From positions 11,594,001 through 11,658,000 of the forward strand of contig OZ249442.1 in NCBI GenBank assembly GCA_965235115.1: a stretch of DNA of 64,000 nt. Direction: 5' to 3'. Position 1 is the first letter of the stretch; every line of letters starts with the position of its first letter. The DNA is from Laetmonice hystrix (taxonomy: Eukaryota). Shown here piece after piece: positions 2,249 to 61,571 of the stretch. The notes under the pieces are model-generated. The model had not been told where the DNA came from. It made no database searches and saw nothing but the letters and a program-made list of their open reading frames with translations. Made by a program: the position numbers and the translations under genes.

Positions 2249-2382
2249 NNNNNNNNNNNNNNNNNNNNNNNNNNNNNNNNNNNNNNNNNNNNNNNNNNNN
2301 NNNNNNNNNNNNNNNNNNNNNNNNNNNNNNNNNNNNNNNNNNNNNNNNNNNNNNNNNNNNNNNNNNNNNNNNNNNNNNNNNN
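2249..2382. other. Assembly gap (134 N)
   Basis: Run of n in the sequence. Confidence 1.
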
Positions 2383-3315: not shown

Positions 3316-4256
3316 AGCTGTACCACAGCACCATCAGCCCCCCCCCCCATATCGACGCTTAAGTGGAACAGCTCCATAAGAAAATGTACCAGCCCTTCAA
3401 CCAGAACGATAAACTAGCAAGACGCTATGTATAGGCATATTTGTATACTGTATGTATTGGCACATGTCGTACATTTCTTTAGACCTACAACACTAAACAT
3501 CAAGTGTGAAACATAATGTAGAGATATATGCCCATAGCAATAAACAGGTAAAACAGAGCACAGAAAAGTCCAAGTACTTTTTACGGAGGCCCTAACCCTA
3601 ACCACTTCGCCTATATCATGGGTGTAGCCAGGGGGGAGTACGAGGGATTCGGACGAACCCTCTTTTGCGGGGCACTATAAAATTAATCAACGTCAAATCT
3701 TTAGGCAGACAGTCAAAGCCTGTGTGTATAGTCGTCTCCGGGCTTCACAAGCCGGCCTCAAGTCGCGGGATGGAGCGCTTAGCACTACAAACTGATGATT
3801 TGCCTCCAGGTCGAACTCCCCCCTTTTTTTTTTTACTTTACCACCCCACTCTTCTCGTGTGCGTATAACTTATGAATGCTGGTCAGCAGAGTGATATGAT
3901 GACGTCGTAATCGGTTTAAAATCTCCTTGGTTTTCTGTTTCTCTGTCCCCCTTTACCTATGTACGACAGGCCTATACAGATTACGTTGTGTTCCCTATCG
4001 CCAACCATTGTATAACGCGCATAAGTTGAAACCTTTGCCTCGTTGGGCAAAAATACCATGCCTCCTTAGTTCTTGTAACTGCATGGGGGAATAGAAGACC
4101 GTGGAAATCGGACTACGAAAACAACAATTGAGTTTCCCAGTAAGCATAGACCTATTCAGCGAGCAAGTAGCTTTGCTGGCCTTGACAACTGAACACTGGT
4201 GTCATATGTTTTAATCATGTGACCGATTTCCAGATCTTCCCCATTGAAACAAGTCG

Positions 4257-11151: not shown

Positions 11152-11486
11152 GTACCTAGGGGCTGGAAGCTGAATCTATACCTAGGGGCTGAAACACGGA
11201 AAGCTGAATCTATACCTAGGGGCTGAAACAGGGGAAGCTGAATCTATACCTAGGGGCTGAAACAGGGGAAGCTGAATCTATCCCTAGGGGCTGAAACACG
11301 GGAAGCTGAATCTATACCTAGGGGCTGAAACACGGGAAGCTGAATCTATACCTAGGGGCTGAAACAGGGGAAGCTGAATCTATCCCTAGGGGCTGAAACA
11401 CGGGAAGCTGAATCTATACCTAGGGGCTGAAACAGGGGAAGCTGAATCTATCCCTAGGGGCTGAAACACGGGAAGCTGAATGTATC
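11152..11486. repeat. 34-bp minisatellite, about 9-10 copies
   Basis: Unit aagctgaatctatacctaggggctgaaacacggg. Confidence 0.95.
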
Positions 11487-13611: not shown

Positions 13612-14140
13612 GTAAGTCGCATTACAAGCACACCCTGGTCGACATTTTTGTGGGAGTATTAAGTGTAGGAGGCCATGGGAAGATATGCCACAGTTTGGAA
13701 AACTTTGGAAAACATTTAGGTTTGAAAAAGTTGGTACAACTCTAAGCTGGTGTAGATTTCTAACTAACGGCTTATTTATCTCTCTCAGCCTTATCTCTCC
13801 GACGGACATCCTTATAGCATTTATCGAATTTACTACGGTAACGTTTAATGACTGAGTACAATTTCTATAAGTAGCATGCATACTCAAAAAGTGAGGAGGA
13901 GAGTTCAGCGAGGTTGAAAGATGCCTTGCCAAGATGGGAAGTAAATTGAATTTGGGAAAGAATTTGCTGCGGCATGTTATACTTTAACTTCGAAGTGTGA
14001 TAACCGGTATCTTCTTTCACATGCAACAAAAAGTGAAATGTTATAACTTAACACATGTTGCTGTCAGTGTGAAATGTTCATTCTAATTTTTGATAGAAAA
14101 TGTGTTCTCTTCAATTTCAACAGAGCAGACGCCGTTGACA

Positions 14141-17100
14141 ATGAGGACCTACGTGTGGCTAGTGGTGGCCATGGTTGCCATCGTTACTGTGGCAGCAGAA
14201 CCGAACGCCGATCTCCTCAAACGGTTGGTGAACGCCCTCGAGGTGAAGGATGCAGGTGAGTGTTTCATTGGTCGACAGGCCCGCATGATAATAGCATTTC
14301 ATCGAAACAACACGCCAGAACGGACGCGCAATATCTTTGCTGTACTACTTTATCTCTGTGACAGCCTTATCTCTACAACGGACAACCTTATCTCTGTGAC
14401 CGACAGCCTTATCTCTCCGACGGACAACCTTATCTTTGTGACCGACAGCTTTATCTCTCCGACCGACTACTGACAGCCTTATCTCTCCGACGGACAACCT
14501 TATCTTTGTGACCGACAGCCTTATCTCTCCGACGGGAAACCTTATCTCTGTGACCGACAGCCTTATCTCTCCGACGGGAAACCTTATCTCTGTGGCCGAT
14601 AGCCTTATCTCTCCGACGGACAACCTATCTCTGTGGCCGACAGCCTTATCTCTCCGACGGACAACCTTATCTCTGTGACCGACAGCCTTATCTCTCCGAC
14701 GGACAACTCTATCTCTGTGACCGACAGCCTGATCTCTCCGACGGACAACCTTATCTCTGTGACTGACAGCCTGATCTCTCCGACGGACAACCTTATCTCT
14801 GTGACTGACAGCCTTTTCACGCTGACCGAGAGCCTTAGCTCTTTAACAAATAGCTTTATGAAATGCCATGTGCCCTCAACCATACAGCATGTGAGTGTGA
14901 CGTCTGTTGCACATTGTTCCGTTGCCTTTCCTCATGAATTCCCAGGGACAGTTTTTGCTTCCGTCAAAACTCGAACATGGTGGTAAAAAACGTTATCTTG
15001 CCGCTTGCATCGATAACAGTCGTTATCCTTACCAGAAAGCTTTTAATAGCTTGTATTAGAAGACTTTAGGGAGAGGTCTTTCAGGAGGAACGTATAGGAC
15101 CAACACGTCCCTTGTGGGATGTGATGCAACAAGCTATTTGACCTTTGTCACCTTGTTTTCATATCAAACACTTACAAACGACATATATAAAAATACATGC
15201 ACTATAGGGACAGGAAACTATGTGGCTAAAAATACCCGCCATATTAGCGTCAGTTGACTGCTACGAGCCCTGACCCTTTTCAGTACTGAACGAACTCGTC
15301 CGAGAGTGAAAAATTCAAGACCATTCACAAATACGGGAATAGGGTATGAGCATTAGAGAAATTAAATGAAGAGAAAGGAAAAGTTAAAGTAGTAGAATGG
15401 AGTATAGGTAGAAATTAAAGCTTTATAGTCATGGTTTTTTCTTGGAGAGGGGTGGGTGGGCGAGGGGAGGTTAGACTTTAGACTTAAGACGCCAAGTCCT
15501 GCTGTGTCAGATACGGTTCTGTGTGCCCGTCGGCGTCAGCTCGGTCATGGTGGAGTGGGTACTGACTGTATCAACAAGTCGAGGACAGTTTGGGGTCACA
15601 TCACCCACCGCACAATGATCAAATTATACATGCACGCATGACGGACCACTCATCACGCGGTCTGTACATCCACATGGCCCTGCCGTAGTCAACCGTCACA
15701 CCGGTAATATTCGGTGTACGTGCAGGGCTGCATGATGGTGGGGGTGGTGGTGGGGGTGGTGGTGGTGGTGGGGGTCATGGAGAGGGTGGGGTGAAGTGGG
15801 GTGAGGTGGTCGGGGGTGATTCTCACGGGGTGGATATTAACAGAATCTTTACACATGCCCTGTGAGTGTAACTTACCTGGATTAACAGGATCTTTACACA
15901 TGCCCTGTGAGTGTAACTTACCTGGATATTAACAGGATCTTTACACATGCCCTGTGAGTGTAACTTACCTGGATATTAACAGGATCTTTACACATGCCCT
16001 GTGAGTGTAACTTACCTGGATATTAACAAGATCTTTACACATGCCATGATATTGGTTCTATCCGAAAGTATCTCTAAAGCTTTCATAATATTTTATCTAC
16101 CTAAGATTGGTCCAAAATGGACAATTCAAATAGAAGATAGAACTAAAAAAAAATACATAAAAAAGAGAGAAAGTAGGAAATACAACAACCAAGGGCATTG
16201 CCTTAAAAACGTGTTACATTAATAGCACATAAAATTAGGTATACCTTGGGTGTCCAAAACTTTTGAGAGCGGTATTAGAGTCGCGCTCCCACCGCGCGAT
16301 CTTTTTTTTTACAGTCAGCCGAAAATTTGAGTTCGCCGGATATCTTTGTACGAGTCATGTTCGGTCGGTTGATTATCGCCCTGTACTTGGACTCTCCCAC
16401 TGTACGATTATCGCCCTGTACTTGGACTCTCCCACTGTACGATTATCGCCCTATACTTGGACTCCCCCACTGTATGATTATCGCCCTATACTTGGACTTT
16501 CCCACTGTACGATTATCGCCCTGTACTTGGACTCTCCCACTGTACGATTATCGCCCTATACTTGGACTTTCCCACTCTACGATTATCGCCCTATACTTGA
16601 ACTTTCCCACTATACGATTATCGCCCTGTACTTGGACTCTCCCACTGTACGATTATCGCCCTATACTTGGACTTTCCCACTGTACGATTATCGCCCTGTA
16701 CTTGGACTTTCCCACTGTACGATTATCGCCCTGTACTTGGACTCTCCCACTGTACGATTATCGCCCTATACTTGGACTTTCCCACTGTACGATTATCGCC
16801 CTATACTTGGACTTTCCCACTGTACGATTATCGCCCTGTACTTGGACTCTCCCACTGTACGATTATCGCCCTATACTTGGACTTTCCCACTGTACGATTA
16901 TCGCCCTGTACTTGGACTCTCCCACTGTACGATTATCGCCCTATACTTGGACTTTCCCACTGTACGATTATCGCCCTATACTTGGACTCCCCCACTGTAC
17001 GATTATCGCCCTATACTTGTACTCCCCCACTGTACGATTATCGCCCTATACTTGGACTCTCCCACTGTACGATTATCGCCCTATACTTGGACTCTCCCAC

Positions 17101-19587
17101 TGTACGATATGCGCGTTAATTTCGGTCATTTTGATCAGATATGGTGGAGATATGTAATGTGGACGGCGGGCTATACGGGAGGGGGGTGTATTGGCGGACT
17201 TGTGAGTGTTTTCATGTCTACGTGTAGAAAGTTCACAAAATTATGTTTTTATCATTTCCAATGAACGTCAGGTTTGCCCGACAGGCGGGTAGCAATATGA
17301 AACGATACAATATTTAGTCATAAAAATAAAACATGTATTGGGGTTGCGTAATGAACTTTGTGTATATATATAAGAATCAGAATGCAATATAGGATAAATT
17401 TGGGTTGCTGAAAATATAACATATAGGTGCATGCTAACCACGGTCGATTCCTGTGTTTGTAGGCCTATAAGGCTATATGTGCCTTATATAGCCTCATGCC
17501 TTCTTTACATAACAGGATGGGATACTAGTCCCATAGCTACATCATATTGCCCTCCAGAACTATCTCACTTGAAGACTCCCATTACATGTATATTGATACC
17601 CACGAGTAGAACGGGTCAACTGTTATTGCGCCATCCCGTGATAGGCCTAGTCGAATGAATCGTGCTCGGACCCAGGAAATTTACACCTGTGTGCTATAGG
17701 ACAAATAACTCTTGTTTTGACCCGGAGGCCCCCTCCATGTATGCAACCAGACGAATTGTCTTGTGAATTGCACCCGGAGTCAGGATTCTCTGCATACCAT
17801 GACACCACCAACACTAAACTGTTTTGCCCTCAGAGAAACGGAGCATGCAGCTGATGAAGTACGACGCCGGCACAGGGAATCTGAAGATCCAGTTCCAGGT
17901 TTGCGTTCAGGGAGATCGCAGTAAACAACCCTGCCGTCCCGGTATTCAAGGCCATTACTGGGAGATCGTCGAGCTGAACAAGGACGGATCCGTCTCCATG
18001 GTGAGTGTGACGCCGGTGTCGCGGTCTCATCTTTCCGCCGGTGTCCCGGTCTCATTTTTCCCCCGGTGTCGCGGTCTCATCTTTCCGCCGGTGTCGCGGT
18101 CTCATCTTTCCGCCGGTGTCGCGGTCTCATCTTTCCGCCGGTGTCGCGGTCTCATCTTTTCGCCGGTGTCGCGGTCTCATCTATCCGTCGGTGTCCCGGT
18201 CTCATCTTTCCGCCAGTGTCGCGGTCTCATCTTTCCGCCGGTGTCGCGGTCTCATCTTTCCGCCGGTGTCGCGGTCTCATCTTTCCGTCGCTGTCCCGGT
18301 CTCGTCTTTCCGCCGGTGTCCTGGTCTCATCTTTCCTACTGTTAGGACGCTGCATCTGAGTATATTAAGTGTGTGTGTCGCCGTTTGGGCTTCACCACTC
18401 GGCAGACATACAGACTTCAGTCAAACTTCTGGGAACTTGGACCGCGGAGAAATGACACCGTGACACATGCAGGTCGTAGATTATACACGTTGCGTTTTAT
18501 AGACCCGACACGTCTATCATGCAATATCGTGTGATATCGGGTCGGCTCGTGTCGCAACGTATAAGCTCTCACATTAATCATATCTATTAATTCTACAAGA
18601 AAACTAATGGGAATTATTGAAATATGCCTATACGTAGGAAATGTTGTATTTAGAACGTTTACCATAATCTCAAAGTTATTTAATGAGTATTTCTTTTCTG
18701 GAGTCTTGTACAAAAAGTAAGATATAAATTTCCAGAATGTATCTCTTTTCAGATCAAATCCGGCAAAACGACGAAATATATGGTGGTGGACCCTACCCTG
18801 GGGGGCCAAGGTTTCTCTGAGGTCATCAATGCCAACTTTGACCCCAAGAAAAGATACAGGGTGACAGCGTGCGAAGCTCCTAAGCTCGGCCAGGGTTACG
18901 ATAAATGTAACATGGTCGAGTTTGTCGCTGGACGGAGCGGTACCTTCTTCCCGACTAGTGGTAAGAAACAACGTCAGGCCTAATGTCCATACCACACTGA
19001 CAACGTCAAGCCTAATGTCCATACCACACCAACAATTGTTGCGGACCTAGTGGTGAGCTGACCCCGCGCGGCGCGCGGGCCAGTCCCATCACTAGATCCG
19101 GGTGCTGGCCCTTGTGGTGCGCTGGCCCGCGTGGTGCGCACCACCAGGGCAGCCCTAGTGAAGGGAGGTGCGACTCCGCTCTAACTTGCCCATTCCAGTA
19201 AATATGTTTCAGCTGTATCTTCCCTAGCACTCATTAGGGGAAGCAAAGGTAATTGTACATATAGTTGGAACATTCCAACACGTTTAACTTCAATTTCAGG
19301 ACCTCTTTTCCACATGCTTCATGTGTAAAGTCCTATGCAGCACCAGGGCCAGCCATCACTAGGGCCAGCACCCGGACCTAGTGGTGGGCTGGCCCTAGTG
19401 CAGGTGCCTGCAGGTGCAGGTGTATAAAATAGTGCATTCTGGGTCAATTTGAGGGGTTGAAACGTTTTGAAAGAGGATTACATTTCGATTACATTTTCAA
19501 AGTTTCCATCTGGTGATATATGTTTCTCTCGCCCTCTTTTTTTCTCCAGCAAAAGCGCGCCCAAGTGGAGGAAATAACGCCGTCTAG
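14141..19587 (+). CDS. Secreted prepro-protein B, paralog of A (175 aa predicted)
   Basis: Exons 14141-14255, 17834-18000, 18753-18960, 19550-19587; GT-AG, phases 1,0,1; ends TAG TAA TGA. Signal peptide, LLKRLVNALEVKDAEKR pro-region, 4 Cys. Shares FQVCVxGDR, GHYWEI, KYMV, FDPKxRYxVxACE and CN motifs with A. Confidence 0.87.
14349..14815. repeat. 42-bp minisatellite (2x21-bp subunits), about 11 copies, gene B intron 1
   Basis: Unit ccttatctctgtgaccgacagccttatctctccgacggacaa; a lone partial copy lies near 13790-13810. Confidence 0.95.
15832..16045. repeat. 47-bp minisatellite, about 4.5 copies
   Basis: Unit ggatattaacaggatctttacacatgccctgtgagtgtaacttacct. Confidence 0.95.
16371..17107. repeat. 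35-bp minisatellite, about 21 copies
   Basis: Unit gattatcgccctatacttggactctcccactgtac; source of the spurious 333/276/150-aa ORFs. Confidence 0.97.
18011..18335. repeat. 25-bp minisatellite, about 13 copies, starting 10 nt after the gene B exon 2 donor
   Basis: Unit cgccggtgtcgcggtctcatctttc. Confidence 0.95.
19042..19402. mobile_element. GC-rich inverted-repeat element in gene B intron 3
   Basis: ggccagtcccatcactagatccgggtgctggcc (about 19078) is the reverse complement of ggccagcacccggacctagtggtgggctggcc (about 19362). Confidence 0.55.
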
Positions 19588-20215: not shown

Positions 20216-20793
20216 ACACGCCTTATCCAGACCGCCGCCAGAATATCATCACTCTGAATCAGAGAGACTATAGGCTGATCTCTGAAAGAGGGAGATTCTA
20301 AGACGAATACGGAACACACCTTACCCAGGCCGCCGCCAGGACATCACCACTCTGAATCAGAGAAACTATAGGCTGATCTCTGAAAGAGGGAGATTCTAGG
20401 ACGAATACAGAACACACCTTACCCAGGCCGCCGCCAGGACATCACCACTCTGAATCAGAGAAACTATAGGCTGATCTCTGAAAGAGGGAGATTCTAGGAC
20501 GAATACAGAACACACCTTACCCAGGCCGCCGCCAGGACATCACCACTCTGAATCAGAGAGACTATAGGCTGATCTCTGAAAGAGGGAGATTCTAGGACGA
20601 ATACAGAACACACCTTGCCCAGGCCCCCACCAGAACATCGTCACTCTGAATCAGAGAGACTAGGCTGATCTCTGAAAGAGGAGGATTCTAGGACGAATAC
20701 GGAACAAACCTTACCCAGGCCGCCGCCAGAACATCATCACTCTGAATCAGAGACACTATAGAATCTAGGCTGATCTCTGAAAGAGGGAGATTC
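20216..20793. repeat. 98-bp tandem repeat, about 6 copies
   Basis: Unit recurs at 98-bp spacing (acatcaccactctgaatcag at 20341, 20439, 20537). Confidence 0.95.
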
Positions 20794-20927
20794 TCGGATG
20801 CGTGATCGCATAGTTGTGAGGAGTGTTTTTCTGACAGATTTCGAGACATCGTTCATTTATCAAATATAGTGTTCCCCGTCTTCCTGTGTATCACTCAGTG
20901 GTCCCCAACCTTTTTCGTGTGGTCCCT

Positions 20928-25175: not shown

Positions 25176-27744
25176 ATGATGAGGACGACGTTTTATCTGC
25201 GGTCATTGTTGAGTTCGACGTTCCTCGTTTTTTTACTCGGAGGGTTGATTGGTCAGGTTGTCCTGACAGCGAGTGACAGACCTTTTGAACGCCCGAAACC
25301 TGGCCACGCCTTCAACTGTGGTAAGTGAAAACAAATTCCGAACCCCCCTCTTGGTAACAATTTTTCTTTTTTTTTCACCATAAAACTTTCTGAATTGGCC
25401 AGGCTAAAAGCAAATTCGTCCCCTGACTACCCCCCCCCCTTACCAAAATCCTGGAGCCGCCCCTGCTGTTGCCGTTTTCTCCATTCATTTAGAATATAGG
25501 CCGGAACAGGGCTACACTAGCTAAAAGCCACCCCTCGTACCATCCAGACACGTTATAAGAAAACAAACTTTGACCAGGTATAACATATCGTTACAGGTGA
25601 TCGGCACACAGGCGCCTGGATCACGTGGAGGCCGCGTCAAATGAGATACGGTGACGTCATAACAATCAGTGCATACTTTAACCCTGGTATGTAAAGTTCA
25701 CTGCGTCTTGGTACAAAAAGGGAATAAAGAAGTGAACCGAACTTTTCGCCCTGAAGGGAATTGTTTTAACACGATAATGTGCAATACTTGTATCCCTTAG
25801 ATGGCAATGTAACAAAGATATCAGGTACACGTAATATATACAGTTTATACCCTAATACCGTTTTCCTGGGACTAATGTCCAAAAATCAAACCGGATATGA
25901 AAGACACTCGTCTTTTTTAATTCAATTGTACACATATCAGAGGTGTAGATTTAGAATCACTGCACGTGAATTGGATTTAAGTCGGATGTCACAAATTTGT
26001 ACATGGAAGTACAGTTATTGACCACCCGGGACACATGCAAGGTAAATATAGGCCTATGTCTGAATTCCGCAAATAGGTACATTATAACATGCGTCTTTAA
26101 TGACCTCCATTGTTTTCATACAGTATTTAATCTCAAGCATGGACTACTGAACGTATCATTTTCCCAACCTAATGCTCCAAACCTTCTTGTCGGAAATGTT
26201 GCATTTGGCTGTGCAGACATACACGTTTACGTCAAAGACAACAGAATATGCCCTTTCTACAAAGACCGTGTGTAGCAATTTGACATTATTATACAAGTTT
26301 TTTCGTTATGGACGAATTACATGCAATAAAATACGACATGATAATGATAGTTTAATCAATTTAATGTAATATTTCATATTATGTACTTTAAAAAGTACCA
26401 GTAAGTTATATTATTATATCATTATTATATCATTCTTAGTGGTAATAAAGAGGCGACAGGTTCAGTTCTAGGATAAAATGTGCTTTAACGTTTCCCCCGG
26501 TTTAATGTACTCAACATCGATCGACTTTTTGATAGGTCCCATCATATTTAAAGAATTTAAAGTGAAACTTCCCCCGTCTACGCCATTAATACCTGTAAGT
26601 ATGTAGAAATTATTTCTATTCCTTGTGTATATATTATGTACATGTACATGAATACATCTATAGTATCGGGTGGATAAAAAAAATGCCCCGAACTTTAAAC
26701 TTTAATATCTCAAAAACTATCCATTATAATTCAATAAAATTTCTCTTACTATAACTTCGTGATCATATCTCTTGTATGTTAAAGTTTCAGCTCAATAGCT
26801 TTGATAGTAATCCCGTGGCCCTAAAAACAAAAATCCGTGTCTAAAAACACAATGCCGGAATTAGGTCAAATATCATGCAGCTGCCAGGTGTCCAATTTGA
26901 CACTTATTTGATGCACCGCATTGTACCTTGGGTAAAGAAGTTTTCAATATTTAGTTTTTGCATGGTTTACAATATGTATAATGTTGTGAACCACTAGATA
27001 TAATAAATTATGTGCTATTCCTAGTACTTCCAGAGAAACCCAGATGTTTAATTTGCCAAACCCTACAGAGAAACTGCAGCATTAGGACGATATGACTGTA
27101 ACCAGAAGTTTAAGGGAAATCGTATCATTATCACGTTTAGCAACACGTTCAGAACGCTGTTTATTTCCCAATAATGGGAGGATAATTCCCTATCAGAGAT
27201 CAGGAAGTGCATTGGCGCATGTAAAAAGAGACTGAGAGCAGTATGAAGTGAACACGGGGGACCGATTGACCACCTACTCTAGTGTGAGGCCAGGCACTCT
27301 GGTGCGACTACCACTCGCTTTAGCCCGGCATTGCGCTTTTGTACAATGATTTTTGTTTTTAGCGCTACGGAAATACTATCCAAGCTATTTAGTTGTAACA
27401 CTAACAACTAAGAGACAACATCGTGAAGTGATAGTAAGAAAAATTTCATTGAATTACAATCAATACTTTTTGAAATATTGGAGTTTAAAGTTCGGGGCGT
27501 TTTTTTTTATCCACCCTATATATGTATATGTAAATGGGAATTCAGGTAAACATGCACGCCTGCCCCAAGTAATCATTTGCGAACATCAATTTTTCAGGGT
27601 ACATACACCTTCAAGCTTAATATCTTTGACGACCATGGGAGGAGGTTTGCCTGTCTCGTCGGTGTGATATCGATCCTGGATGATTTCAATATGATTCGTC
27701 GTTCTGGGAGCCGATACATGGAACCTAACATTCAGATAAACTGA
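25176..27744 (+). CDS. ML (MD-2-related lipid recognition) domain protein 1, MD-2/MD-1-like, secreted (194 aa)
   Basis: Exons 25176-25320, 25597-25686, 26124-26267, 26536-26594, 27598-27744; GT-AG, phases 1,1,1,0; ends TGA. Signal peptide; 4-Cys ML pattern (FNC, GCAD, ICPFYKD, FACL); ITWRP and GTY motifs. A probable UTR exon ends at 24845 (AG|GTAAGT). Confidence 0.88.
26666..27518. mobile_element. Non-autonomous Tc1/mariner-type element in ML1 intron 4
   Basis: About 35-bp TIRs gggtggataaaaaaaaatgccccgaactttaaact / agtttaaagttcggggcgtttttttttatccaccc, flanked by TA; no transposase ORF. Confidence 0.8.
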
Positions 27745-29428
27745 GATAACATAATCATGCAGATCTCTACATAAGGAGCCACTATATGTATACATGTATA
27801 TACTGCACCTTCAGTGAGTCACGTAAGACTAAACACTACTTTCACTTAGGACTAACAGTCTTTGTATATTCAAGATAAAGACCGACGGCGACAAGAAAAA
27901 CAAATTTAGTGGTTGACCACTGACTATACCATAGACCTATAGGCCTACCAGTGTAACGTTAGATGTTAGAAGTTCAGTTATTCGCTGCACGAGACTACCA
28001 CTAGAATGTAGAAGTAGGCCTAGGCCCATGTAGAGAGCCCAATAAAAACACATTGCCGGGCCCCCACCGGCCTGAGCCTGGAGGCCAGATATGCCACTGC
28101 ATCTCATGTATTATGTGCGCTGCATGCATTTGGTTATTTGCTAATTGTTTCATCGACTACTGTCACTCCTGACATAGCACTATAGCTATAATGCAGCAGC
28201 CAGGGGCGTGGGAAAGGACGGGGGCACGGGGGCCACCCTGATATATCCCCCCACCCCAATAGTTGACCCCCCCCCACCTTATTTCTGCATGCGGACTGAT
28301 TCTTCTGATAACTATAAGGCCTTGGATTTTGTTCCCAGATGATGCCAGGAAAATGGGGCATTTAGCACTATTTTCAATGGTTTTTTTTGGGGGGGGGGGA
28401 GGACCCCAGACCCCCAGCTCTAAGCTTCACGTCTTCGGCGCTCGGATGGGGGTGCCGCGTCCCCCGTTTCCTAAATTCATGGATCCGTCCTTGCAGTCCC
28501 TCCAATAAAAATTTGCTTCCTACGCCACTGAAATAGGCATAGGCTTTCAACATGTAGAGAACCCAATAAAAACACGTTGCTATACCCCACCGGCTGTATT
28601 GGAGTATTGGAGTATGCCAATGCATCTCATGCATGCAATGCATCTCATGCATGCATTTGAATCCAAGACAAGATCACCCCCCCCCCCCGTCTTCCGACCC
28701 CCCCCCCCCCCCCCCACCCTCCCAACCCCATCCCCCATGCACCCCGTCTTGTGAATTAGCGAAGTAACTGTCGGAGAATGCAAGGTGCCTGTGAAGGCCA
28801 GAATATTCAGTGTCTGAAGGCCAGGAATTCCACCGTGAACCGGTGTGGAGTTTCAGTTTGTCTGTGAAGTAGAGTTTGTACCTCTAGGCCACCGTACATT
28901 ACGTACCGAGGAAAAAATGTCATGTTACGAGGTCCGTGAACCATGACTGGGATTTCCCCGCAGCCTGCATCGCACTGACCTGTTTACAGTTGTTCTGGAG
29001 GACTAAACGATCTATAGAGCCGTACTATCTGTATGGACAGTAATATAACCGTACTGTTCACCATAAATGACACAGATCCACACGTGTCATTACGGAAACG
29101 TTTGCAATAAGCCTAAATGGTCGCCAGACACCAAACCGACCTCGGCTGAAAGGTCAGTATAACTAAATAGGCCTAACCCACATTTACATCAGATATAAAT
29201 GTATACACTCGAGCAAGTGATAGATCGTTTGGCGCACGTGATTTCCCAGAAAATGGGCCTCAGAGCTCTATTATATAACCTCCGTATGGCTGTAACTTGT
29301 AAGCAAAATATTGTAAACCTAATATGCATTATTGATGGCCAAGGAGTCAATTAGCACATGTACGTATGTAAAGCAATATTGGAGCTAATAATATGCATAT
29401 CCCCTAATATACGTTATTTTGCTTCTAG

Positions 29429-32400
29429 ATGACGAAATCAGTTGATTGGTCCCTTCGGCTGGTCGTAACTGCCTGCCTTGCTACTTGTCTTCTTGGGGCA
29501 GTCATCAGCAGTTCTAAGGGGAATGATGTGCACGTTAAATTCCCTGATATTGGTCAAGTAACGGATTGTGGCAAGTCTGATGATTTCCTGTATCTAAATC
29601 TAATAACGCCTACGTTAAGTCATCTGTGTGCACATGTGTGTTGTTTGTCATAGGTCTATGGCGATAATATAAATAAACGTGCTGTTTATTCGGTACGCAA
29701 TCTATAGAACACAACCATTTGAGATGTCATGGGCAAAATGAAAAGGCGGCTTGATTAAAGGGTTGGGGGGGGGGGGGGGGTCGCTGAGAGGATTATGTAT
29801 AGATCTAACCTAAACAATTATTGAAGGTTGTTGAGGTTTAACAAGTGGAACGGACCGGAATCCTCACTGCTCAGAGTGAGATGTAGTTGTGCTATATCGA
29901 GTATAGGCAGATGTAATATTCTGGTGGTGAAGAAAGAACAAAAATTAGGAGTGAACCAAAAATAATGACGTGGATCATGGGAACATTATATCACAATGAC
30001 TATTATACAAATATGGCACTTGGTTGAGTGCAATATGAAAATTTATGGCACGATGGCAACTGATATTGCACGACGCGAAGCGGAGTGCAATATCAGTTTC
30101 CAGAGTGCCATAAATTTTCATATTGCACGATACCAAGTGCCATATTTGTTTTATTTTATGGCTGCCGCACTTTTCCTGTCTATGCCAGGACCCATCAACG
30201 ACTGCACAGTCAGTTTAACTTTACTCCATAAGACTCATCATCTAGACCTAGGCCTACCGGTATGCTGAGCCTCAGTGCGTCAGTACTCGCAATTCTACCA
30301 GTAAATCATGATCAAAACATGACCAATTAACAATCAGTCACCACATAAACTTCTCATGTCGGGAAATTAGATAGGCTACAGGGATCCATCGTGTTCACGA
30401 CCGCTTTATTTAGCTAGGCCTAGAGCCAGCCTAGACAAGAGGCTATACAAGATTCTGAACTCAGCCTTGCGTAGTTTCCGCTTTGCTTTCATACGCTGTC
30501 ACCCCCCAGGCTGTTCTATTAAACTTACGTTAAGAATGCCTAGGAGCCTATTTGCACGAGGGGGTGAAAACACTTGACGGCAATGCAAAAGTAATATTGA
30601 CTGGTCAATATTACTTTTTCCGTGCAATATTAGTTTTTATCTGTGATCACGTGACAGGGAACTGACCAATCAGGACAGGGAAAGTGCGGCAGCCATAAAA
30701 TAAAGGCCTATATTGCGTGCGGTAACAGATTTCTGAACTCGTTGCACTGAACTCGTTGCACTGCATGGAAGTATATCCTACAGCCTGATTGACTATTTAA
30801 AGTGGGGACTAGTGGGATTTGTTGTTGGCTCCTGACTATGTGCAAGTATCGTTGTTGCAGAAGGTAAAAGTGAAAACTTCAAGATCACGTGGACTCCTAA
30901 ACAGCTATCCATTGGAGATACGGTCACTGCGAATGGTTACATCAAACCAGGTCCGTATTATATGTGGGCATTAAAGGAAAAGTAAAATAGGTGAACGTGA
31001 AGAAAGTATTGAAAAATAGTTATATCTCTTATATGATCATCTGGTTGTTGGTAATCTTATCACAGATAAGATAGTCCTCTTATACTTTAAATTAGGTACA
31101 AATATAATCGTTTTCCTGTGACTTAGGACCAAAGACAAAAACAAAACAAAACAGGTTCGTTTTCCTGTGACTTACGACCAAAGACAAAAACAAAACAAAG
31201 CAGGTATAAAAGACGATCGTCTTTTTTCGATTCACTGAAAAATATCTGATTTCACCCACAAATTTGTCAAGAAATACCTAGGGTAAAACCCTAAATATAT
31301 AGGGTAAAACGACTAGGATGATTTTTGTTTAATCCTACAGAACGTGACATATGGAAGAAGCCAAATTACAATTTTTCTTAGTCCTTTCCTATAAGCTTTC
31401 AGCCTTGGATATTCAAGTAACTCTGACAAAAAATACAGTGTCAATACCTTACAACATAATTGATTAAAATATTTTCAGCTTCGAGATAAAACATATTATG
31501 TTTGCTAAATAGTTGGAAGATAGGCCCTACATGGACAGGACATCATAACTCGTTGTGAAAAACCTTAGTTGGTATTACTGCCACCAGGGGGCGGCAATTC
31601 GTCTATCATAGCATGGCACCAGAATGTGAAGCACCAGTTAGACAGTCCCAAAAGAGAAATATCAGAAATCTGTCGGCCCTGTTGAGTAACCTAGGCCTAG
31701 GGCCTAAATTTAGGACACCTCACCAAGATATGTGCCATTGTGTAACATGAAGAAATAATATAGGCCTACATTTAATTCAACCGTCATAATTTTATAGTGC
31801 TTTGTGTTTTCTCCCGGAAATATAGCGCGTGACTTAATAGAGGGAGGATGGGCGAATTTTAGTGCGTTCCTGGAAGGTGTTCCCCACCCCGCCTTCGCCT
31901 CGTATGGCCACTTCAAGTGTGAAGACGTCCAAACCTATGTGCCGTGGAAAGTGTGCCCTCTTTTGAAAGACCGTAAGTATCAGCCTTAGAATTTTCTAGT
32001 TAATCTTCTGGGCTTTTAAATTTTGTTTTCTATGTTATAGACCCAATTTGCTATATTCTGAAGACATTGCTGTTGTCCACAGCCTTACTTTTATTATCAT
32101 ACTATTTCAGTATAATTTCTTTGTTTGTTTGTAGGTCCGGTCATAGTACGGAATTACAAGTATCTAATCAAACCATCGGAGCCAGTACCAGTCGTATGTC
32201 AAACGCTTGATTCGAACTTTCTCTTCCTATACTAATAGACAGACCTTTTTCTTGAGATATTATCAGGGCATATAGGTCTAGACAAAACAGGAGCGGATCT
32301 GGAATTTTTGAAGATAAGAGGGGGGACAGCTAGTTTTGTGTGTCCGTTCTATTTTTTCTAATATTTTCTTTTCACCTGTTTTGTCTATAAAATGGGGGTA

Positions 32401-32716
32401 TCCCCCACCCCCTCGGACTTTCCTATAGATATGCGACTTGGGCCTAATTTCTTTTATAGGCCTATTGTTTTAAATTTCTGTTGATGTGAAGATGTTGGCA
32501 AATGGAGAAGAACTAGTACAATATAGGGGGCCTACAGAGTTTTGTGGCCAACGTGCCGACCACGTAGACCTAATATAGGCCTATATAGTTCTGTTTCACT
32601 AATATTTTCATGTTCCACTGTTGCAGGGAAAGTATTCTCTGAGATTTGAGCTCTTTGACAACAACAAGAAGAGATTCGGTTGTTTCATTGCCACCCTTGA
32701 GCTTCTCGATACTTAA
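29429..32716 (+). CDS. ML domain protein 2, MD-2/MD-1-like, secreted (175 aa)
   Basis: Exons 29429-29570 (GC donor G|GCAAGT), 30861-30950, 31826-31972, 32135-32193, 32627-32716; phases 1,1,1,0; exons 2 and 4 equal ML1 lengths (90, 59 nt). Motifs YIKP|ARDL, KCED, VCPLLKD, GKY, FGCF; ends TAA. A probable UTR exon ends at 29152 (AG|GTCAGT). Confidence 0.9.
30008..30705. mobile_element. Palindromic repeat element(s) in ML2 intron 1
   Basis: About 140-bp palindrome 30008-30148 centred on cgcgaagcg; further inverted pair tatggctgccgcactttt/ccctgtc (about 30156) and gacagggaaagtgcggcagccata (about 30675). Confidence 0.65.
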
Positions 32717-33213
32717 AGGACGCCACACCAACAACCAGACTCCGAGAACGAGAAGTAAAGAAGAAAATACCTACTTTACAATAAGGGCGTGGTTCAATCG
32801 AGACCCACAAAACGTATTCTGACTGTACGCACAGTTTAAATATGGCGGACACAGCATTGCAGACATTATTAATATGACCATATTGAATGAATACAAAGGT
32901 CAGTCTGAGCTCAGCCTTTGGGCCGGGGTTAATTTGATCATATCACAACTAGGTAATGTATTCCGAGGAAGGAGGCTGGTTCCTCCTCTCTTCAGATCTG
33001 TTCATGTGAAGATGTTGGCAAATGGAAAAGAATTAGTACCTATACAGGCTATAGGAGGCCTACAGAGTTTTGTGGCCAACGTGCCGACTATTTTTCCATG
33101 GTAAAATAACGCATGCTATATAGTCTACTACTGCTGTAGGCTAATACCTTTCAATACTCAGTGAAAATATATCTTTTTTAATCACGGCCAGAGCATTGTA
33201 GGTGTATATATTT

Positions 33214-35125: not shown

Positions 35126-39928
<4,803 letters not shown>

Positions 39929-44026: not shown

Positions 44027-47000
44027 TCATTGAAACCCTTCGAAAGGGAGTGCTACCTGTTCAAAGAGATCTTCACCACCAGAGGGCAGCAGTGTCATGT
44101 TTAAGTTCAGTCCACTTGTATTTGAATCAAACTGTTGTCGCCGACCGTGGCTTGATGCCCTCCTTGGGCCATCAGGTTCTCTTTCCCTCTCCATCAATTT
44201 CTCCACCTCACTCGTCGAAAGGTGGTCAACCTCTAATTTGTGCACATTTTTTAGGTGATGTCGGAGAACGCAGGGAAAGCGTGCAAAGTAATTACAAAGC
44301 CGACACCAGTGTCCCCTTCCTTCGTCTTCGAGGCGATGGTAGCGAAGATGTTTGGAGAAGTAATCCTTCACCAGTGTCGTAAAGTTACACTTGGGGCAAT
44401 CTAGACGCTTTGCTGACGCCGCGTCCACATGCGCTCGTCTCATATGGCCTCGGAGGTGTTCTGTGTCAAAGTTATGACAGCAACAGTTCATTGGCAACGT
44501 GATTATGAAGGCCCAACATTATTTATCTATTTCCAAACTGACTAAAGATGACTTTAAATAGCAAACACAAGGAGTAATAAGATTTCACATGGTTTTAGAT
44601 AGGTCCCAGTCCCATAGCACAAAACAATTTAGAAAGTACAATTATCACTAATTTGAATCAAGTCATGAAAAGCCACTACAAGCACTTTTATAGCAGTCAC
44701 AGTTCTATCATCTATGCAGGCACGAAGCTTTATTCTGGGTTGGCAAAATTGCAAGTCGTTTTCTCAACTGAGTTGCATAAATGATTATGAGATCGTTATG
44801 GTTGGCACATCTGGTAGACCTCTGAAGTGAGAGAGATAAGCCGGTACCATACCTTCCGCCTTGTAGCCACGTCCACAGATCTCACAGGTTACATTGATTC
44901 CCTCCTCGTGAGACATCTTGTGACGCCTCATCAGTCCCTTACCCAGGCTCTTGTAATCACACTTGTCACAGTAAAGTGGTTTATTCTTGGAGATGTTTAT
45001 GTCGTGGGACATAAACATATGTCTATTTAAATCATTTCTGTAAAAAGAAAAGGGTGAGTTGACATTAATCATGTGTTTCTTTGGTACCTTTTTTTTGGTT
45101 ATATTTCTACATTGAAATTACCCTTAACAAAGAAAGTTCAACCAGCAGAAACTTTGATGAAATTTTCTGTTTCCCTTTTTTACAATCAACAATGGATAGC
45201 AATTAAACAATGAATAGCAGATAGGTCTAAGCTAATAAGCACAATAATTAGAAGATAAAAAAATATGGCATACCTTCGGCGGAATTGAAGAGAACAGATA
45301 GAACAGAGATGAGGTTTTTCATCAGTGTGGGTCATCCTGATGTGCTGTTTGAGATTATTTTTATGGTACGGAAGATCATCCAGAAAAGTCTTCCCACATA
45401 TTGGGCAGTTGGTCGTCTTTCTCTCCTTTGGGGGTCCATGCATGAATCGAATGTGATTTTCAAGACTTTTTGCAAGCAGTACCTTTCCACATTGTGGACA
45501 TGAACAAGGGCCTTTCGGCTTTTCAAACCGGGTTAGCCTAACTCTGTGCTTCATCCTAGCATGCAGGTAGACGTCGAGTGGGCTGTATGTCATGTAGACA
45601 CAGCGGCTACAGTGGTAGCGAGGGATGAATGTTGGTGCCACCCACTGATGGTGCATGACCTGGTGTTGTATGACCTTTCCAATGACCATTAATAGCTGCA
45701 GCTCCTGCTGCTGGTCACTCTGACACCTGACCTTGGAGCCACATGTACACTTGGTACAAGTCATGTTCCACACGCCAGCCTCTGGCTGCTGAGCATGGTC
45801 TGCATCCTGGACGTGACGGGCAAAGTCTCCCAAACTGCTACACTTGTAAGGGTTTGACTGACAGAATGGGCAATGAGAGGGCACGTCGCTGCGGAACCTT
45901 CGGTTCAAATCAATGGAAGTAGATATGTTCTGGGTGTCGGAGTCATCATACACATCAAAGGCAAATACATTCAGGTCCTCGACAGACATGGTACAACCGC
46001 TACTGAATACCGACACAGAGGGGTTTGATTTTGGCTTTGTAATTGTAGCAGGAACCCGGTGTGATTTCTGAGGAGCCTTTCGGTATCCTTTCCAACTAGG
46101 CTGAACGTTATGGAAATGTCGCCTAACAGCTGCTGGGATGTTAGATGGCCCAAGTCTGGGACTAGGTTTCTGGGATAGATTCCTACTAGTCAGATGGGTC
46201 TGAGGTCTTGCTAATGGAACTGGTGCCTTCGTGTTTTGCCTTCTTGGAGATTTAATATCCTTTGGTTTTCCTTTCTGACCAACTTCATTCTGTGGACTCC
46301 AGTCAGGATCACTTTTATCCGAATTGTCATCTGTTTTATCATCATCATCATCATCATCGTCGTTGTTGTCGTCATCTTCCCCATCAAACTCTATATCACT
46401 GCCATCTATATAGTCATTAAGTTCATCGTCCTCCTCACCATCATCCTCATCAAGGTCAATATCAATATAATGAATGTCATCGTCAGAGTCATCATCACCA
46501 GTATCATCATCATCCATATCATCTTCTTGGACATCTTCATAAAAAAACTCTTCCAGATCATCACCATAGTCTATATCATCATCATCATCATCATCATCAT
46601 CGTCGTCGTCGTCATACAATACAAGGGAACTGTCTTGTTTTTCACCCTTTATATCTGTCATCTGACAATCTTTCTGTACGGAGCCACCTTCAGAACTCGG
46701 GCCTTCTCCTGTCAAACTCATCCTAATACCAGGTTCCTTTTTAATATTGGCATTCTGTGAATGTTCTGACGGGTCTGTGGTGCTTTGTTCTTGTGTATCC
46801 GTATGTATCATCTCTTCGAGGGTCAACAGATGTTCACTGCCACGCTGATCATCCACGGGAAGTACAACAATGGATGTCACCCTAGGAGAGGCATATCAGA
46901 TATCAATGATTATTTATTATACCTAAATATGGAACAAGAGAATGAACTGTGGATTTCATCAATAAAACAGGTCCTTTTGTCAATACACATTAAAGGTACG

Positions 47001-61000: not shown

Positions 61001-61571
61001 TTATGTATGTGATATGAAGTTCTGTCTCAGTTGCCACCAACAAGAATAGAAAAAAAAACAGAATTAATATGCTGTGGTTCATATACCGGTCTAGTTGTAA
61101 AGTCATCTTGCAAGCAGAGCTAAGGAACTGCCCCCATGCTGCACCTGTGTCATTGTTAAACCAGGCATACAGGTACCAATCTGACTCAAGTCAACTCAAT
61201 CAAACTGGTTTTTCATGCCTTGAAAACCATACTGTCTCATCCTGACCTGGCTTCATTCAGCGGGCCCTGGCTCCATTCAACTTGGTCTAAGTGAGGTCAG
61301 CGTTTCCGGGGTATAAAAATCCAGTTAGGTATAGTGGAGTTAAGTAGGTATAAGATCAGCTTAAGAGATATATTTGTTTACAAGTAGCAACTTCCATCTA
61401 AATGTGATATGAGTTAGAACTCTGGATTTTACAGGCATTGTGTGAGATATTCGAAGACCAGGTGTATAACTTGCGTCAAGAGCTGACGAACCGTGACTCG
61501 CGTATCAGTTTGTTGGAGGAGGAGCTGGCTCTGTACAAGGCTGAGGTGGAGAATTTACGGAAAGCTCTCAG
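52024..61571 (+). CDS. SNX16: Sorting nexin-16 (PX domain + coiled coil); 3' end not identified
   Basis: Exons 52024-52794, 56392-56478, 58238-58386, 60908-60977, 61435-61571 (ends phase 2 at AG|GTATGT). [51 protein letters not shown] and [14 protein letters not shown] match SNX16; a coiled coil follows. Confidence 0.92.
54525..54921. repeat. 25-bp minisatellite, about 16 copies
   Basis: Unit ggatgggtatagatgtggtaatgta. Confidence 0.95.
57600..57880 (+). mobile_element. Possible heavily decayed CR1/L2-type LINE ORF2 fragment
   Basis: Scattered translations [11 protein letters not shown] and [14 protein letters not shown] resemble the LKW..HI and KLE.VQRRA.R motifs; many stops and shifts, so weak. 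Confidence 0.3.
59489..60907. repeat. 68-bp minisatellite (2 related 34-bp halves), interrupted by a MITE and running up to a SNX16 acceptor
   Basis: Unit ggttgtatttgaggactgatatcttgtataatttggttgggttcgtagccctgatataacttgtgttt; resumes at 60754. Confidence 0.93.
59982..60753. mobile_element. 772-bp non-autonomous Tc1/mariner (pogo/Tigger-like) element with TA TSD
   Basis: TIR cagtagaacctcac...acgaccacct / aggtggtcgt...gtgaggttctactg; TA at 59980-81 and 60754-55; removing it restores the satellite unit. Confidence 0.88.

What the first reader, a model, noticed from the sequence alone, without database searches (positions are those of the whole stretch)
25176..32716. Two invertebrate ML genes with the exon architecture and motifs of vertebrate MD-2/MD-1
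Both genes have five coding exons, phases 1,1,1,0, and a 90-nt symmetric exon 2. All four introns fall where I recall them in human MD-2 (LY96): after YC|D (here DC|E, NC|G), in YIP|RRDL (here YIKP|ARDL), after CRALKG|E (here CPLLKD|R, CPFYKD|R) and before GKY (here GKY, GTY). The four Cys map to MD-2 C37, C95, C105 and C148; the C25-C51 pair is missing. NPC2 has a different phase pattern as I recall. MD-2 is generally treated as a vertebrate TLR4 co-receptor, so true invertebrate orthologs would bear on the origin of LPS sensing. The vertebrate details are from memory and need verification.
Basis: partly seen in the sequence, partly recalled or inferred. Interest (0 to 1): 0.8.

Follow-up and report, generated by a model that had tools for sequence, protein, structure and literature searches.

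The report
Invertebrate MD-1/MD-2-like lipid-binding gene pair
Two neighbouring genes in this invertebrate encode small secreted lipid-pocket (ML-domain) proteins that share exon layout and chromosomal neighbours with vertebrate MD-1 and MD-2, so the partner of the endotoxin receptor TLR4 may be older than vertebrates.

Summary
Two tandem + strand genes, g1 (25176-27744, 194 aa) and g2 (29429-32716, 175 aa), each have five coding exons, intron phases 1,1,1,0 and a 90-nt exon 2. They are paralogues (29% identity, E 3e-29). g2 passes Pfam's ML-domain cut-off.

I measured intron maps on real loci. Pig LY96 (MD-2) and marmoset LY86 (MD-1) have the same four introns in the same phases. Three of the four are also in NPC2, both in macaque and in this genome's two NPC2-like genes, so they are not diagnostic. 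Only the phase-1 intron six codons after the third Cys is shared solely with MD-1 and MD-2. GM2A shares none.

New evidence: the genome's only SSR1 (TRAP-alpha) gene lies 0.75 Mb away and its TMEM70 orthologue 1.3 Mb away. These are neighbours of human LY86 and LY96 respectively. Two such hits among ten tested loci has a chance probability of about 1e-3.

Sequence does not resolve the question. The tree is a polytomy. Profile comparison is weakly better with NPC2 than with MD-1. The fold is generic ML. The C25-C51 disulfide is absent, no RNA data exist and no orthologues were found.

Verdict: real ML genes. They are probably (about 0.55) co-orthologues of MD-1/MD-2. Function is untested.

The parts
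25176..25320 (+). g1 exon 1: start codon, signal-like hydrophobic segment, first conserved Cys (C48). Ends in phase 1 straight after the Cys codon.
   Evidence: GTAAGT donor; hydrophobic window at residues 15-26
25597..25686 (+). g1 exon 2: 90 nt, phase 1 to 1.
26124..26267 (+). g1 exon 3: N-x-S sequon, Cys pair C108/C121, CPFYKD motif. Ends in phase 1, six codons after C121.
26536..26594 (+). g1 exon 4: 59 nt, phase 1 to 0.
27598..27744 (+). g1 exon 5: starts GTY, holds the last Cys (C165), carries a 19-aa C-terminal extension relative to g2, then the stop.
29429..29570 (+). g2 exon 1: start codon, signal-like segment, first conserved Cys (C47). GC-AG intron follows (donor GCAAGT).
30861..30950 (+). 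g2 exon 2: 90 nt, phase 1 to 1. Ends YIKP, with the next codon split before RDL.
   Evidence: same alignment column and phase as LY96, LY86 and NPC2
31826..31972 (+). g2 exon 3: RDL, N-x-S sequon, GVPHP, Cys pair C109/C121, CPLLKD. Ends in phase 1, six codons after C121. This is the intron shared only with LY96 and LY86.
32135..32193 (+). g2 exon 4: 59 nt, phase 1 to 0.
32627..32716 (+). g2 exon 5: starts GKY, holds the last Cys (C165), then the stop. This is the part most like MD-1.

Best explanation
g1 and g2 are a tandem pair of intact genes for secreted ML-domain (MD-2-related lipid-recognition) proteins. Each is predicted to have a signal peptide followed by a beta-sandwich of about 130 residues. 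The fold would be held by two disulfides (first Cys to last Cys, plus a central pair) and would enclose a hydrophobic pocket for a lipid.

They form an ML lineage separate from this animal's own NPC2-type genes. They are most likely co-orthologues of the ancestor of vertebrate MD-1 (LY86) and MD-2 (LY96). The pair duplicated in tandem in this lineage.

Shown here:
- the gene models and their paralogy;
- ML-domain membership;
- gene architecture identical to LY96 and LY86, including one intron that NPC2 lacks;
- linkage to SSR1 and TMEM70.

Inferred: secretion, disulfide pairing, lipid binding and orthology.

Speculative: that they serve as lipid-presenting partners of a Toll-like receptor, as MD-1 does for RP105 and MD-2 for TLR4.
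For: ML domain. g2 matches PF02221 at E 7.4e-6 and 26.8 bits (cut-off 22.7), residues 44-170 against profile positions 4-131 of 133. g1 is its paralogue (E 3e-29). An AF2 model built with a mixed alignment (pLDDT 67) matches only ML structures at the top of the lists.

Distinct from NPC2. This genome's two NPC2-like genes group with vertebrate NPC2 at 93/97 support, excluding g1/g2. g1/g lack the NPC2 C-x4-C hairpin. Their exon 2 is 90 nt, against 108-111 nt in NPC2.

MD-1/MD-2 architecture. In an alignment made without intron information, introns 1, 2 and 4 fall in identical columns and phases in g2, pig LY96 and marmoset LY86. Intron 3 is phase 1 and lies six codons after the third Cys in g1, g2, LY96 and LY86. 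It is absent from macaque NPC2 and from both NPC2-like genes here. GM2A introns are all phase 0.

Linkage. The sole TRAP_alpha (SSR1) locus is at C7:12.38 Mb and the TMEM70 orthologue at C7:12.96 Mb. The window is at C7:11.59-11.66 Mb. In humans TMEM70 abuts LY96 (bioRxiv 10.1101/817528), and the gene order is LY86, RREB1, SSR1 (PMC4502905). Two of ten tested loci within 1.35 Mb compares with 0.043 expected. RPP40 and RAB2 are also on C7.

Weak sequence hints. The only ML chain reached by phmmer against PDB is mouse MD-1 (E 1.7). hhalign against MD-1 gives P 0.003 over the last exon. The top Foldseek hits in PDB and in AFDB clusters are MD-1 / Lymphocyte antigen 86.
Against: - Sequence does not place them with MD-1/MD-2. 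The best tree has that split at 49/4 support only, and AU tests cannot reject a sister relation to NPC2 (p 0.45) or GM2A (p 0.25).
- hhalign is better with NPC2 (P 4.5e-4 over 98 columns) than with MD-1, and shows nothing with MD-2. g2 carries NPC2-like motifs (GVPHP, CPLLKD).
- The C25-C51 disulfide of MD-2 and its MD-1 equivalent are missing.
- Intron 3 could be an old ML intron lost in NPC2. GM2A has a phase-0 intron about one codon away. No other invertebrate ML gene could be sampled.
- The linkage is at megabase scale, not adjacency. ELOC, STAU, RIOK and FARS2 homologues lie on other chromosomes.
- The structural ranking is biased by an alignment rich in MD-2 and MD-1. By VIA-align Z-scores, NPC2, Der f 2 and MD-1 are tied.
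- There is no transcript evidence and no orthologue in the protein collections.
Confidence: 0.55

Rival explanations
1. g1/g2 are a lineage-specific or invertebrate-wide divergent ML family with no special relation to MD-1/MD-2. On this view the shared third intron is an ancestral ML intron lost in the NPC2 stem, or a parallel gain. The nearness of SSR1 and TMEM70 would be coincidence or loose ancestral linkage.
For: The sequence tree is an unresolved polytomy and AU tests reject nothing. Three of the four introns are pan-ML. GM2A has an intron about one codon from intron 3. AFDB clusters list many unnamed invertebrate ML proteins at similar scores. Several other human LY96 and LY86 neighbours are not on C7.
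Against: It needs two extra ancient ML lineages with reciprocal losses, one lost in vertebrates and one lost here. It leaves the double linkage unexplained (Poisson P about 1e-3; about 0.02-0.04 if SSR1 and TMEM70 count as one cluster). It also leaves unexplained the exact position and phase match of intron 3 and the shared 87-90-nt exon 2.
Confidence: 0.3
2. g1/g2 are fast-evolving duplicates of NPC2. They would have lost the hairpin disulfide, gained one intron and taken on a new lipid-carrier role, for example sterol or semiochemical transport, as in arthropod NPC2 expansions.
For: hhalign is best with NPC2 (P 4.5e-4). The GVPxP and CPxxKD motifs are shared with NPC2. VIA-align Z-scores are highest for NPC2 chains (10.5-10.8). 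AU cannot reject G+NPC2.
Against: This genome's NPC2-like genes cluster with vertebrate NPC2 to the exclusion of g1/g2 (93/97), so any split predates that clade. g1/g2 are on a different chromosome (C7, against C3). The gained intron would have to land by chance on the exact MD-1/MD-2 site and phase.
Confidence: 0.1
3. The loci are not functional genes. They would be decaying pseudogenes or chance exon-like ORFs.
For: No RNA run for this organism. No homologue in two very large protein collections. g1 alone is below the Pfam cut-off. g2 uses a GC donor.
Against: Both copies keep open frames across five exons, conserved Cys and sequon positions, and consensus splice sites, although they have diverged to 29% identity. 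That pattern is what purifying selection on both copies would leave.
Confidence: 0.03

Closest known systems
MD-1 (LY86) and MD-2 (LY96), vertebrate ML-domain partners of RP105/CD180 and TLR4
   Same: Five coding exons with four introns at the same sites and phases (1,1,1,0). These include the phase-1 intron six codons after the third Cys, which NPC2 lacks. Exon 2 is 87-90 nt. The [RE]D[LI] motif follows intron 2 (g2 only) and G-x-Y follows intron 4. Cys residues correspond to MD-2 C37, C95, C105 and C148. The loop between the central Cys pair is long (12-13 residues, against 10). Both are linked to SSR1 and TMEM70. The last exon resembles MD-1.
   Different: No significant overall sequence similarity and no supported clade. 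The N-terminal disulfide (MD-2 C25-C51) is absent. Exons 3 and 4 are 15-18 and 6 nt longer. The middle of the protein looks more like NPC2. Any receptor partner or ligand is unknown.
NPC2 (Niemann-Pick C2 sterol carrier), including the two NPC2-like genes of this genome at C3:31.28 Mb
   Same: ML fold. Introns 1, 2 and the one before the penultimate strand are shared. GVPxP and CPxxKD motifs are shared. NPC2 gives the best, still weak, profile-profile score (P 4.5e-4).
   Different: NPC2 has no intron after CPxxKD and a 108-111-nt exon 2 that encodes a C-x4-C hairpin missing here. Its central Cys loop has 6 residues. Vertebrate NPC2 has an extra C-terminal intron. g1/g2 fall outside the NPC2 clade (93/97) and lie on another chromosome.
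GM2 activator protein (GM2A)
   Same: Member of PF02221. The C-terminal G-x-Y...KR-x-GC motif resembles g2 exon 5 when read by eye.
   Different: All three GM2A introns are phase 0 and none coincides exactly with a g1/g2 intron. GM2A is larger and has eight Cys. The structural match is weaker (Z 7.0).
Arthropod and other invertebrate ML proteins reported to bind LPS (for example shrimp PvML1, PMC9832027) or to work with Toll (Spodoptera MD-like protein with Toll5, PMC11536157)
   Same: Secreted invertebrate ML-domain proteins, some with immune roles alongside Toll receptors.
   Different: They are usually treated as NPC2-like or generic ML proteins, not as MD-1/MD-2 orthologues.

Membership tests
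ML domain (Pfam PF02221, E1_DerP2_DerF2) | Match to the family profile above the curated cut-off over the whole domain | tested here: met
   g2 scores 26.8 bits (cut-off 22.7), E 7.4e-6, profile positions 4-131 of 133. g1 alone scores 15.5 bits but is a clear paralogue of g2 (E 3e-29).
ML domain (Pfam PF02221, E1_DerP2_DerF2) | Secreted protein of about 130-150 residues with an immunoglobulin-like beta-sandwich fold | tested here: met
   Signal-like N-terminus. The AF2 model (pLDDT 67) has ML structures as its top matches: Foldseek E about 1e-5 and VIA Z 8-10.8. Caveat: the alignment used for folding consisted of ML proteins. The single-sequence model failed (pLDDT 37).
ML domain (Pfam PF02221, E1_DerP2_DerF2) | Conserved disulfides: first strand to last strand, plus a central pair | tested here: inconclusive
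   Cys residues sit at the matching alignment positions. Actual pairing cannot be shown by sequence.
MD-1/MD-2 (LY86/LY96) subfamily | Gene architecture: five coding exons, introns in phases 1,1,1,0 after the first Cys, at the end of strand C, six codons after the third Cys, and before G-x-Y | tested here: met
   Measured on pig LY96 (L009) and marmoset LY86 (L011) and compared with g1/g2.
MD-1/MD-2 (LY86/LY96) subfamily | Three disulfides, including the N-terminal pair (MD-2 C25-C51) | tested here: not met
   g1 and g2 have no Cys before the first conserved Cys in the mature part and none in exon 2.
MD-1/MD-2 (LY86/LY96) subfamily | Sequence or phylogenetic grouping with LY86 and LY96 | tested here: inconclusive
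   hhalign: MD-1 P 0.003 over 31 columns, MD-2 not significant. The tree split G+MD has 49/4 support, and the alternatives are not rejected.
MD-1/MD-2 (LY86/LY96) subfamily | Conserved gene neighbourhood (TMEM70 and JPH1 beside LY96; RREB1 and SSR1 beside LY86) | tested here: inconclusive
   SSR1 is 0.75 Mb away and TMEM70 1.3 Mb away on the same chromosome. They are not adjacent. The C2H2 zinc-finger gene in the window could not be identified as RREB1. JPH was not resolved.
MD-1/MD-2 (LY86/LY96) subfamily | Binds lipid A or phospholipid and associates with a TLR4- or RP105-type ectodomain | not testable with these tools
   No candidate receptor was chosen, so no co-folding job was sent.
NPC2 | Six Cys, including the C-x4-C hairpin encoded in a 108-111-nt exon 2 | tested here: not met
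   The hairpin Cys are absent and exon 2 is 90 nt.
NPC2 | Gene structure with no intron between the central Cys pair and the penultimate strand | tested here: not met
   g1/g2 have intron 3 there. Macaque NPC2 and both NPC2-like genes of this genome do not.
NPC2 | Falls inside the NPC2 clade | tested here: not met
   The NPC2 clade, which includes this genome's NPC2-like genes, has 93/97 support and excludes g1/g2. A sister position remains possible (AU p 0.45).
GM2A | Four exons with phase-0 introns, eight Cys, a larger beta-cup | tested here: not met
   Mandrill GM2A junctions fall at CDS positions 81, 243 and 426, all phase 0. The structural match is weaker.

The most novel reading that the evidence does not exclude
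The MD-1/MD-2 lineage, and with it a secreted lipid-presenting partner for Toll-like receptors, predates vertebrates. On this reading g1/g2 are its surviving invertebrate representatives and work with one of this animal's TLRs to sense microbial or endogenous lipids. The MD/TLR partnership would then be inherited by TLR4 and RP105 rather than invented for them.
Probability: 0.15. Interest if true: 0.85.

Novelty: new member of a known kind. Interest (0 to 1): 0.62.

Why it matters
MD-2 is the subunit that actually holds lipid A in the TLR4 endotoxin receptor. Current work finds it only in bony vertebrates: it was not found in cartilaginous or jawless fishes (bioRxiv 10.1101/817528), and no orthologue was found in Ciona (PMC7347617). 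That has led to the view that MD-2-dependent LPS sensing is a vertebrate invention.

Sequence searches cannot settle the matter, because MD-1 and MD-2 evolve so fast that they no longer detect even NPC2. Gene architecture and linkage do not fade in the same way.

This locus shows that a non-NPC2 ML gene with the exact MD-1/MD-2 exon plan sits near SSR1 and TMEM70 in an invertebrate. That gives a concrete, testable candidate for the pre-vertebrate ancestor. It also gives a recipe for finding more: the phase-1 intron after C-x-x-x-K-x, a 90-nt exon 2, and linkage to SSR1 and TMEM70.

If the rival reading is right, these are simply two more divergent invertebrate ML proteins, which is ordinary.

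Tried and rejected
- Exon-by-exon Pfam scans of the pieces found nothing. Only the spliced protein matches.
- A representative-library search with g2 exon 3 (48 aa) gave no hit.
- The word-indexed homologue search with g2 gave none. The same search with an NPC2-like exon of this genome gave only two unnamed metagenomic proteins. The organism's clade therefore seems poorly represented, and I could not name the organism.
- No RNA runs were found.
- Single-sequence AF2 failed (pLDDT 37).
- phmmer of g1 against PDB gave nothing relevant.
- Structure ranking cannot separate MD-1, MD-2, NPC2 and Der f 2. It is also biased by the alignment used. The ESM Atlas fold search did not complete.
- Tree and AU tests are uninformative on the key split.
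- The idea that the neighbouring C2H2 zinc-finger gene (44030-46895, - strand) is RREB1 could not be confirmed.
- The second PF06979-family gene, on C3, could not be named by the Atlas.
- NPC2-ISCA2 microsynteny, tried as a control, is not kept in this genome.
- Rfam found nothing in the window.
- Earlier scan notes held nothing on this locus.
- No co-folding job was sent, because I had no principled TLR candidate.

Method note. The database confirmed them (99% identity to the gorilla representative for LY96; exact for the other three). All intron maps were made on non-human loci returned by the tools.


Full report
**What is there**

I rebuilt both gene models from the window. g1 has exons 25176-25320, 25597-25686, 26124-26267, 26536-26594 and 27598-27744, and encodes 194 aa. 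g2 has exons 29429-29570, 30861-30950, 31826-31972, 32135-32193 and 32627-32716, and encodes 175 aa.

Both genes lie on the + strand, 1.7 kb apart. Both have five coding exons, intron phases 1,1,1,0 and a 90-nt exon 2. Every acceptor is AG. Every donor is GT except the first donor of g2 (GCAAGT, a GC-AG intron). Each exon frame runs into a stop a few codons inside the intron.

The two proteins are 29% identical, with blastp E 3e-29. Exon boundaries, four Cys positions and one N-x-S sequon are conserved. Both copies stay intact despite deep divergence, which argues for real, selected genes.

There are only these two copies in the window. Exon-3 searches found no further copy in the 627-Mb genome. 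No RNA run exists for this organism, so the splicing is inferred.

**Family**

Single exons match nothing in Pfam. The spliced g2 protein matches the ML domain PF02221 above the curated cut-off: 26.8 against 22.7 bits, E 7.4e-6, covering profile positions 4-131 of 133. g1 reaches only 15.5 bits but is g2's paralogue.

AlphaFold2 without an alignment failed (pLDDT 37). With a mixed alignment of MD-2, MD-1, NPC2 and window pieces (A2) the model reached pLDDT 67.

The best matches of that model are all ML proteins. These include mouse MD-1, mouse MD-2, NPC2 from yeast, human and cow, and Der f 2. Foldseek E-values are about 1e-5 and VIA-align Z-scores run from 8 to 10.8. Because the alignment consisted of ML proteins, this confirms compatibility with the fold. 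It does not rank subfamilies.

**Checking the vertebrate side with data**

I fetched LY96 orthologues and the LY86, NPC2 and GM2A clusters. I then mapped the proteins onto non-human genomic loci with an exact spliced mapper.

| Gene | CDS exon lengths (nt) | Phases | Junctions |
|---|---|---|---|
| Pig LY96 | 112/90/129/53/99 | 1,1,1,0 | YC\|d\|D, YYIA\|r\|RDI, CGALKG\|e\|T, FSP\|\|GQY |
| Marmoset LY86 | 136/87/129/53/84 | 1,1,1,0 | QSC\|d\|P, GIIL\|r\|EDI, CGRRKG\|e\|Q, IPQ\|\|GEY |
| Macaque NPC2 | 82/108/173/78 plus a short tail | 1,1,0,0 | KDC\|g\|S, TFTS\|n\|I, EYPS\|\|IKL, VQI\|\|VSHL |
| Mandrill GM2A | not listed | 0,0,0 | junctions at CDS 81, 243 and 426 |

The literature agrees for human MD-2: skipping exon 2 removes 30 aa and changes D38 to G (PMC9755862).

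**What the architecture does and does not say**

The tool-made alignment A2 knows nothing about introns. In it, introns 1, 2 and 4 of g2, LY96 and LY86 fall in the same columns (57, 87, 175) with the same phases. NPC2 shares columns 87 and 175. NPC2's first intron also follows the Cys that bonds to the last Cys, so it too is the same intron. Three of the four introns are therefore general to the NPC2/MD part of the ML family and are not diagnostic.

I also read the two NPC2-like genes of this genome at C3:31.28 Mb. They have exactly the NPC2 layout. Exon 2 is 108-111 nt and encodes the C-x4-C hairpin. There is no intron after CPLKDN or CPVTAN. A phase-0 intron precedes LKVV.

Two features set g1/g2 apart from NPC2 and match MD-1 and MD-2. 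One is intron 3: phase 1, in the sixth codon after the third Cys (C-x-x-x-K-x, then the split codon). The other is the short 87-90-nt exon 2 without the hairpin.

There is a caveat. GM2A has a phase-0 intron about one codon from that site (CPFKE||GTY). An old intron in this neighbourhood, later lost in NPC2, cannot be excluded. I also could not sample other invertebrate ML genes.

**Sequence affinity**

phmmer of g2 against PDB reaches only one ML chain, mouse MD-1. The E-value is 1.7, over the last exon.

Profile-profile comparison gave the following:

| Comparison | Result |
|---|---|
| g1+g2 vs NPC2 | P 4.5e-4 over 98 columns |
| g1+g2 vs MD-1 | P 0.003 over 31 columns |
| g1+g2 vs MD-2 | nothing |
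| MD-1 vs MD-2 | P 2e-11 |
| MD-1 or MD-2 vs NPC2 | nothing |

So g1/g2 sit in between. They still resemble NPC2 in the middle (GVPHP, CPLLKD) and MD-1 at the end.

A maximum-likelihood tree gives four clades. These are g1+g2; NPC2, including this genome's NPC2-like genes (93/97); MD-1+MD-2 (89/90); and GM2A. The best tree joins g1/g2 to MD-1/MD-2, but with no support (49/4). AU tests cannot reject g1/g2 with NPC2 (p 0.45) or with GM2A (p 0.25).

The finding's refutation criterion, robust grouping with NPC2 or GM2A, is not met. Positive support from sequence is also lacking.

**Linkage, the new evidence**

The window is at C7:11.594-11.658 Mb, on a 36.9-Mb chromosome. I searched the genome for Pfam families of genes that flank LY96 or LY86 in humans.

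- The only TRAP_alpha (SSR1) locus is at C7:12.38 Mb.
- An intact, full-length TMEM70 gene is at C7:12.96 Mb. The ESM Atlas names it TMEM70.
- In bony vertebrates LY96 lies between TMEM70 and JPH1 (bioRxiv 10.1101/817528).
- On human 6p25-p24 the order is F13A1, LY86, RREB1, SSR1 (PMC4502905).
- RPP40 is also on C7 (34.2 Mb).
- A RAB2 exon lies in the window itself (38810-39124). From memory, human RAB2A is on 8q, the same arm as LY96.
- ELOC, Staufen, the three RIO kinases and FARS2 are on other chromosomes.

I counted seven specific families, which give ten loci. Two loci lie within 1.35 Mb of the window, where 0.043 are expected (Poisson P about 9e-4). If SSR1 and TMEM70 are treated as one cluster, P is about 0.02-0.04.

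A single ancestral locus carrying SSR1, an MD-like gene and TMEM70 would explain this. After the vertebrate genome duplications it would have left LY86-RREB1-SSR1 on one paralogon and TMEM70-LY96 on the other. The NPC2-like genes are on a different chromosome (C3).

**How it probably works**

Each protein has a signal-like N-terminus and then an ML beta-sandwich. The Cys positions suggest one disulfide tying the first strand to the last and one closing a 12-13-residue loop in the middle. ML proteins hold a lipid between the two sheets, and I infer the same here. The ligand is unknown.

Under the orthology reading, the most interesting possibility is a role as a soluble lipid-presenting partner of a Toll-like receptor. 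Nothing here tests that. I did not send a co-folding job because I had no principled receptor candidate.

**Verdict**

The exon plan is truly that of MD-1 and MD-2, but only one intron and the short exon 2 discriminate against NPC2. Sequence cannot decide. Linkage to SSR1 and TMEM70 tips the balance towards co-orthology with the MD-1/MD-2 ancestor.

My confidence values are:
- about 0.55 for co-orthology with the MD-1/MD-2 ancestor;
- about 0.3 for an unrelated divergent ML lineage;
- about 0.1 for an NPC2 offshoot;
- about 0.03 for non-genes.

I found no report of a pre-vertebrate MD-1/MD-2 orthologue in the papers searched.

Noticed in passing
window 38810-39124 (+): An exon of a RAB2 orthologue lies about 6 kb downstream of g2. 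Its top PDB matches are Rab-2B, fly Rab2 and Rab-2A at E about 1e-47, against 1e-30 for Rab14. From memory, human RAB2A is on 8q, the same arm as LY96.
   Followed up: partly
window 44030-46895 (-): A multi-exon C2H2 zinc-finger gene with a 569-aa open exon that contains His-rich low-complexity stretches. By position it could be the RREB1 counterpart (human order LY86, RREB1, SSR1). Pfam and the ESM Atlas give only generic zinc-finger matches.
   Followed up: partly
G000:C3:31277598-31285471 and G000:C3:33106112-33106825: This genome's two canonical NPC2-like genes sit in tandem on C3. A second PF06979-family gene, with introns and TMEM186-like by eye, lies 1.8 Mb from them. Both ML loci therefore have a TMEM70-family gene within 2 Mb. 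This may be the trace of an old segmental duplication, or coincidence.
   Followed up: partly
window 4248-4532 (+) and 14087-14470 (+): Two open frames begin with a signal-like hydrophobic stretch followed by a shared LLKRL-x-x-x-L-[EK] motif. They may be paralogous first exons of small secreted peptide precursors.
   Followed up: no
window 29990-30160 and 30590-30700 (intron 1 of g2): Long, near-perfect inverted repeats that look like a hairpin-forming miniature transposon inside the first intron of g2. Read by eye only.
   Followed up: no
window 32470-32560 and 33000-33090: A repeated element of about 90 bp (GTTCATGTGAAGATGTTGGCAAATGGA...) occurs once in intron 4 of g2 and again about 300 bp downstream of its stop codon.
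   Followed up: no
window 11165-11485, 14360-14842, 16371-17108, 18011-18336, 20216-20798, 54525-54891, 59477-59946: Several minisatellite arrays with periods of 21-98 bp and up to 21 copies. They account for most of the long ORFs in the window, so those ORFs are not genes.
   Followed up: partly
window 61408-61632 (+): An open frame with a heptad-like, Leu/Glu-rich coiled-coil sequence, probably an exon of a neighbouring gene. The region 54-64 kb has a strong positive GC skew.
   Followed up: no
window 2249-2382: A run of 134 N (assembly gap or masked stretch). Left untouched.
   Followed up: no
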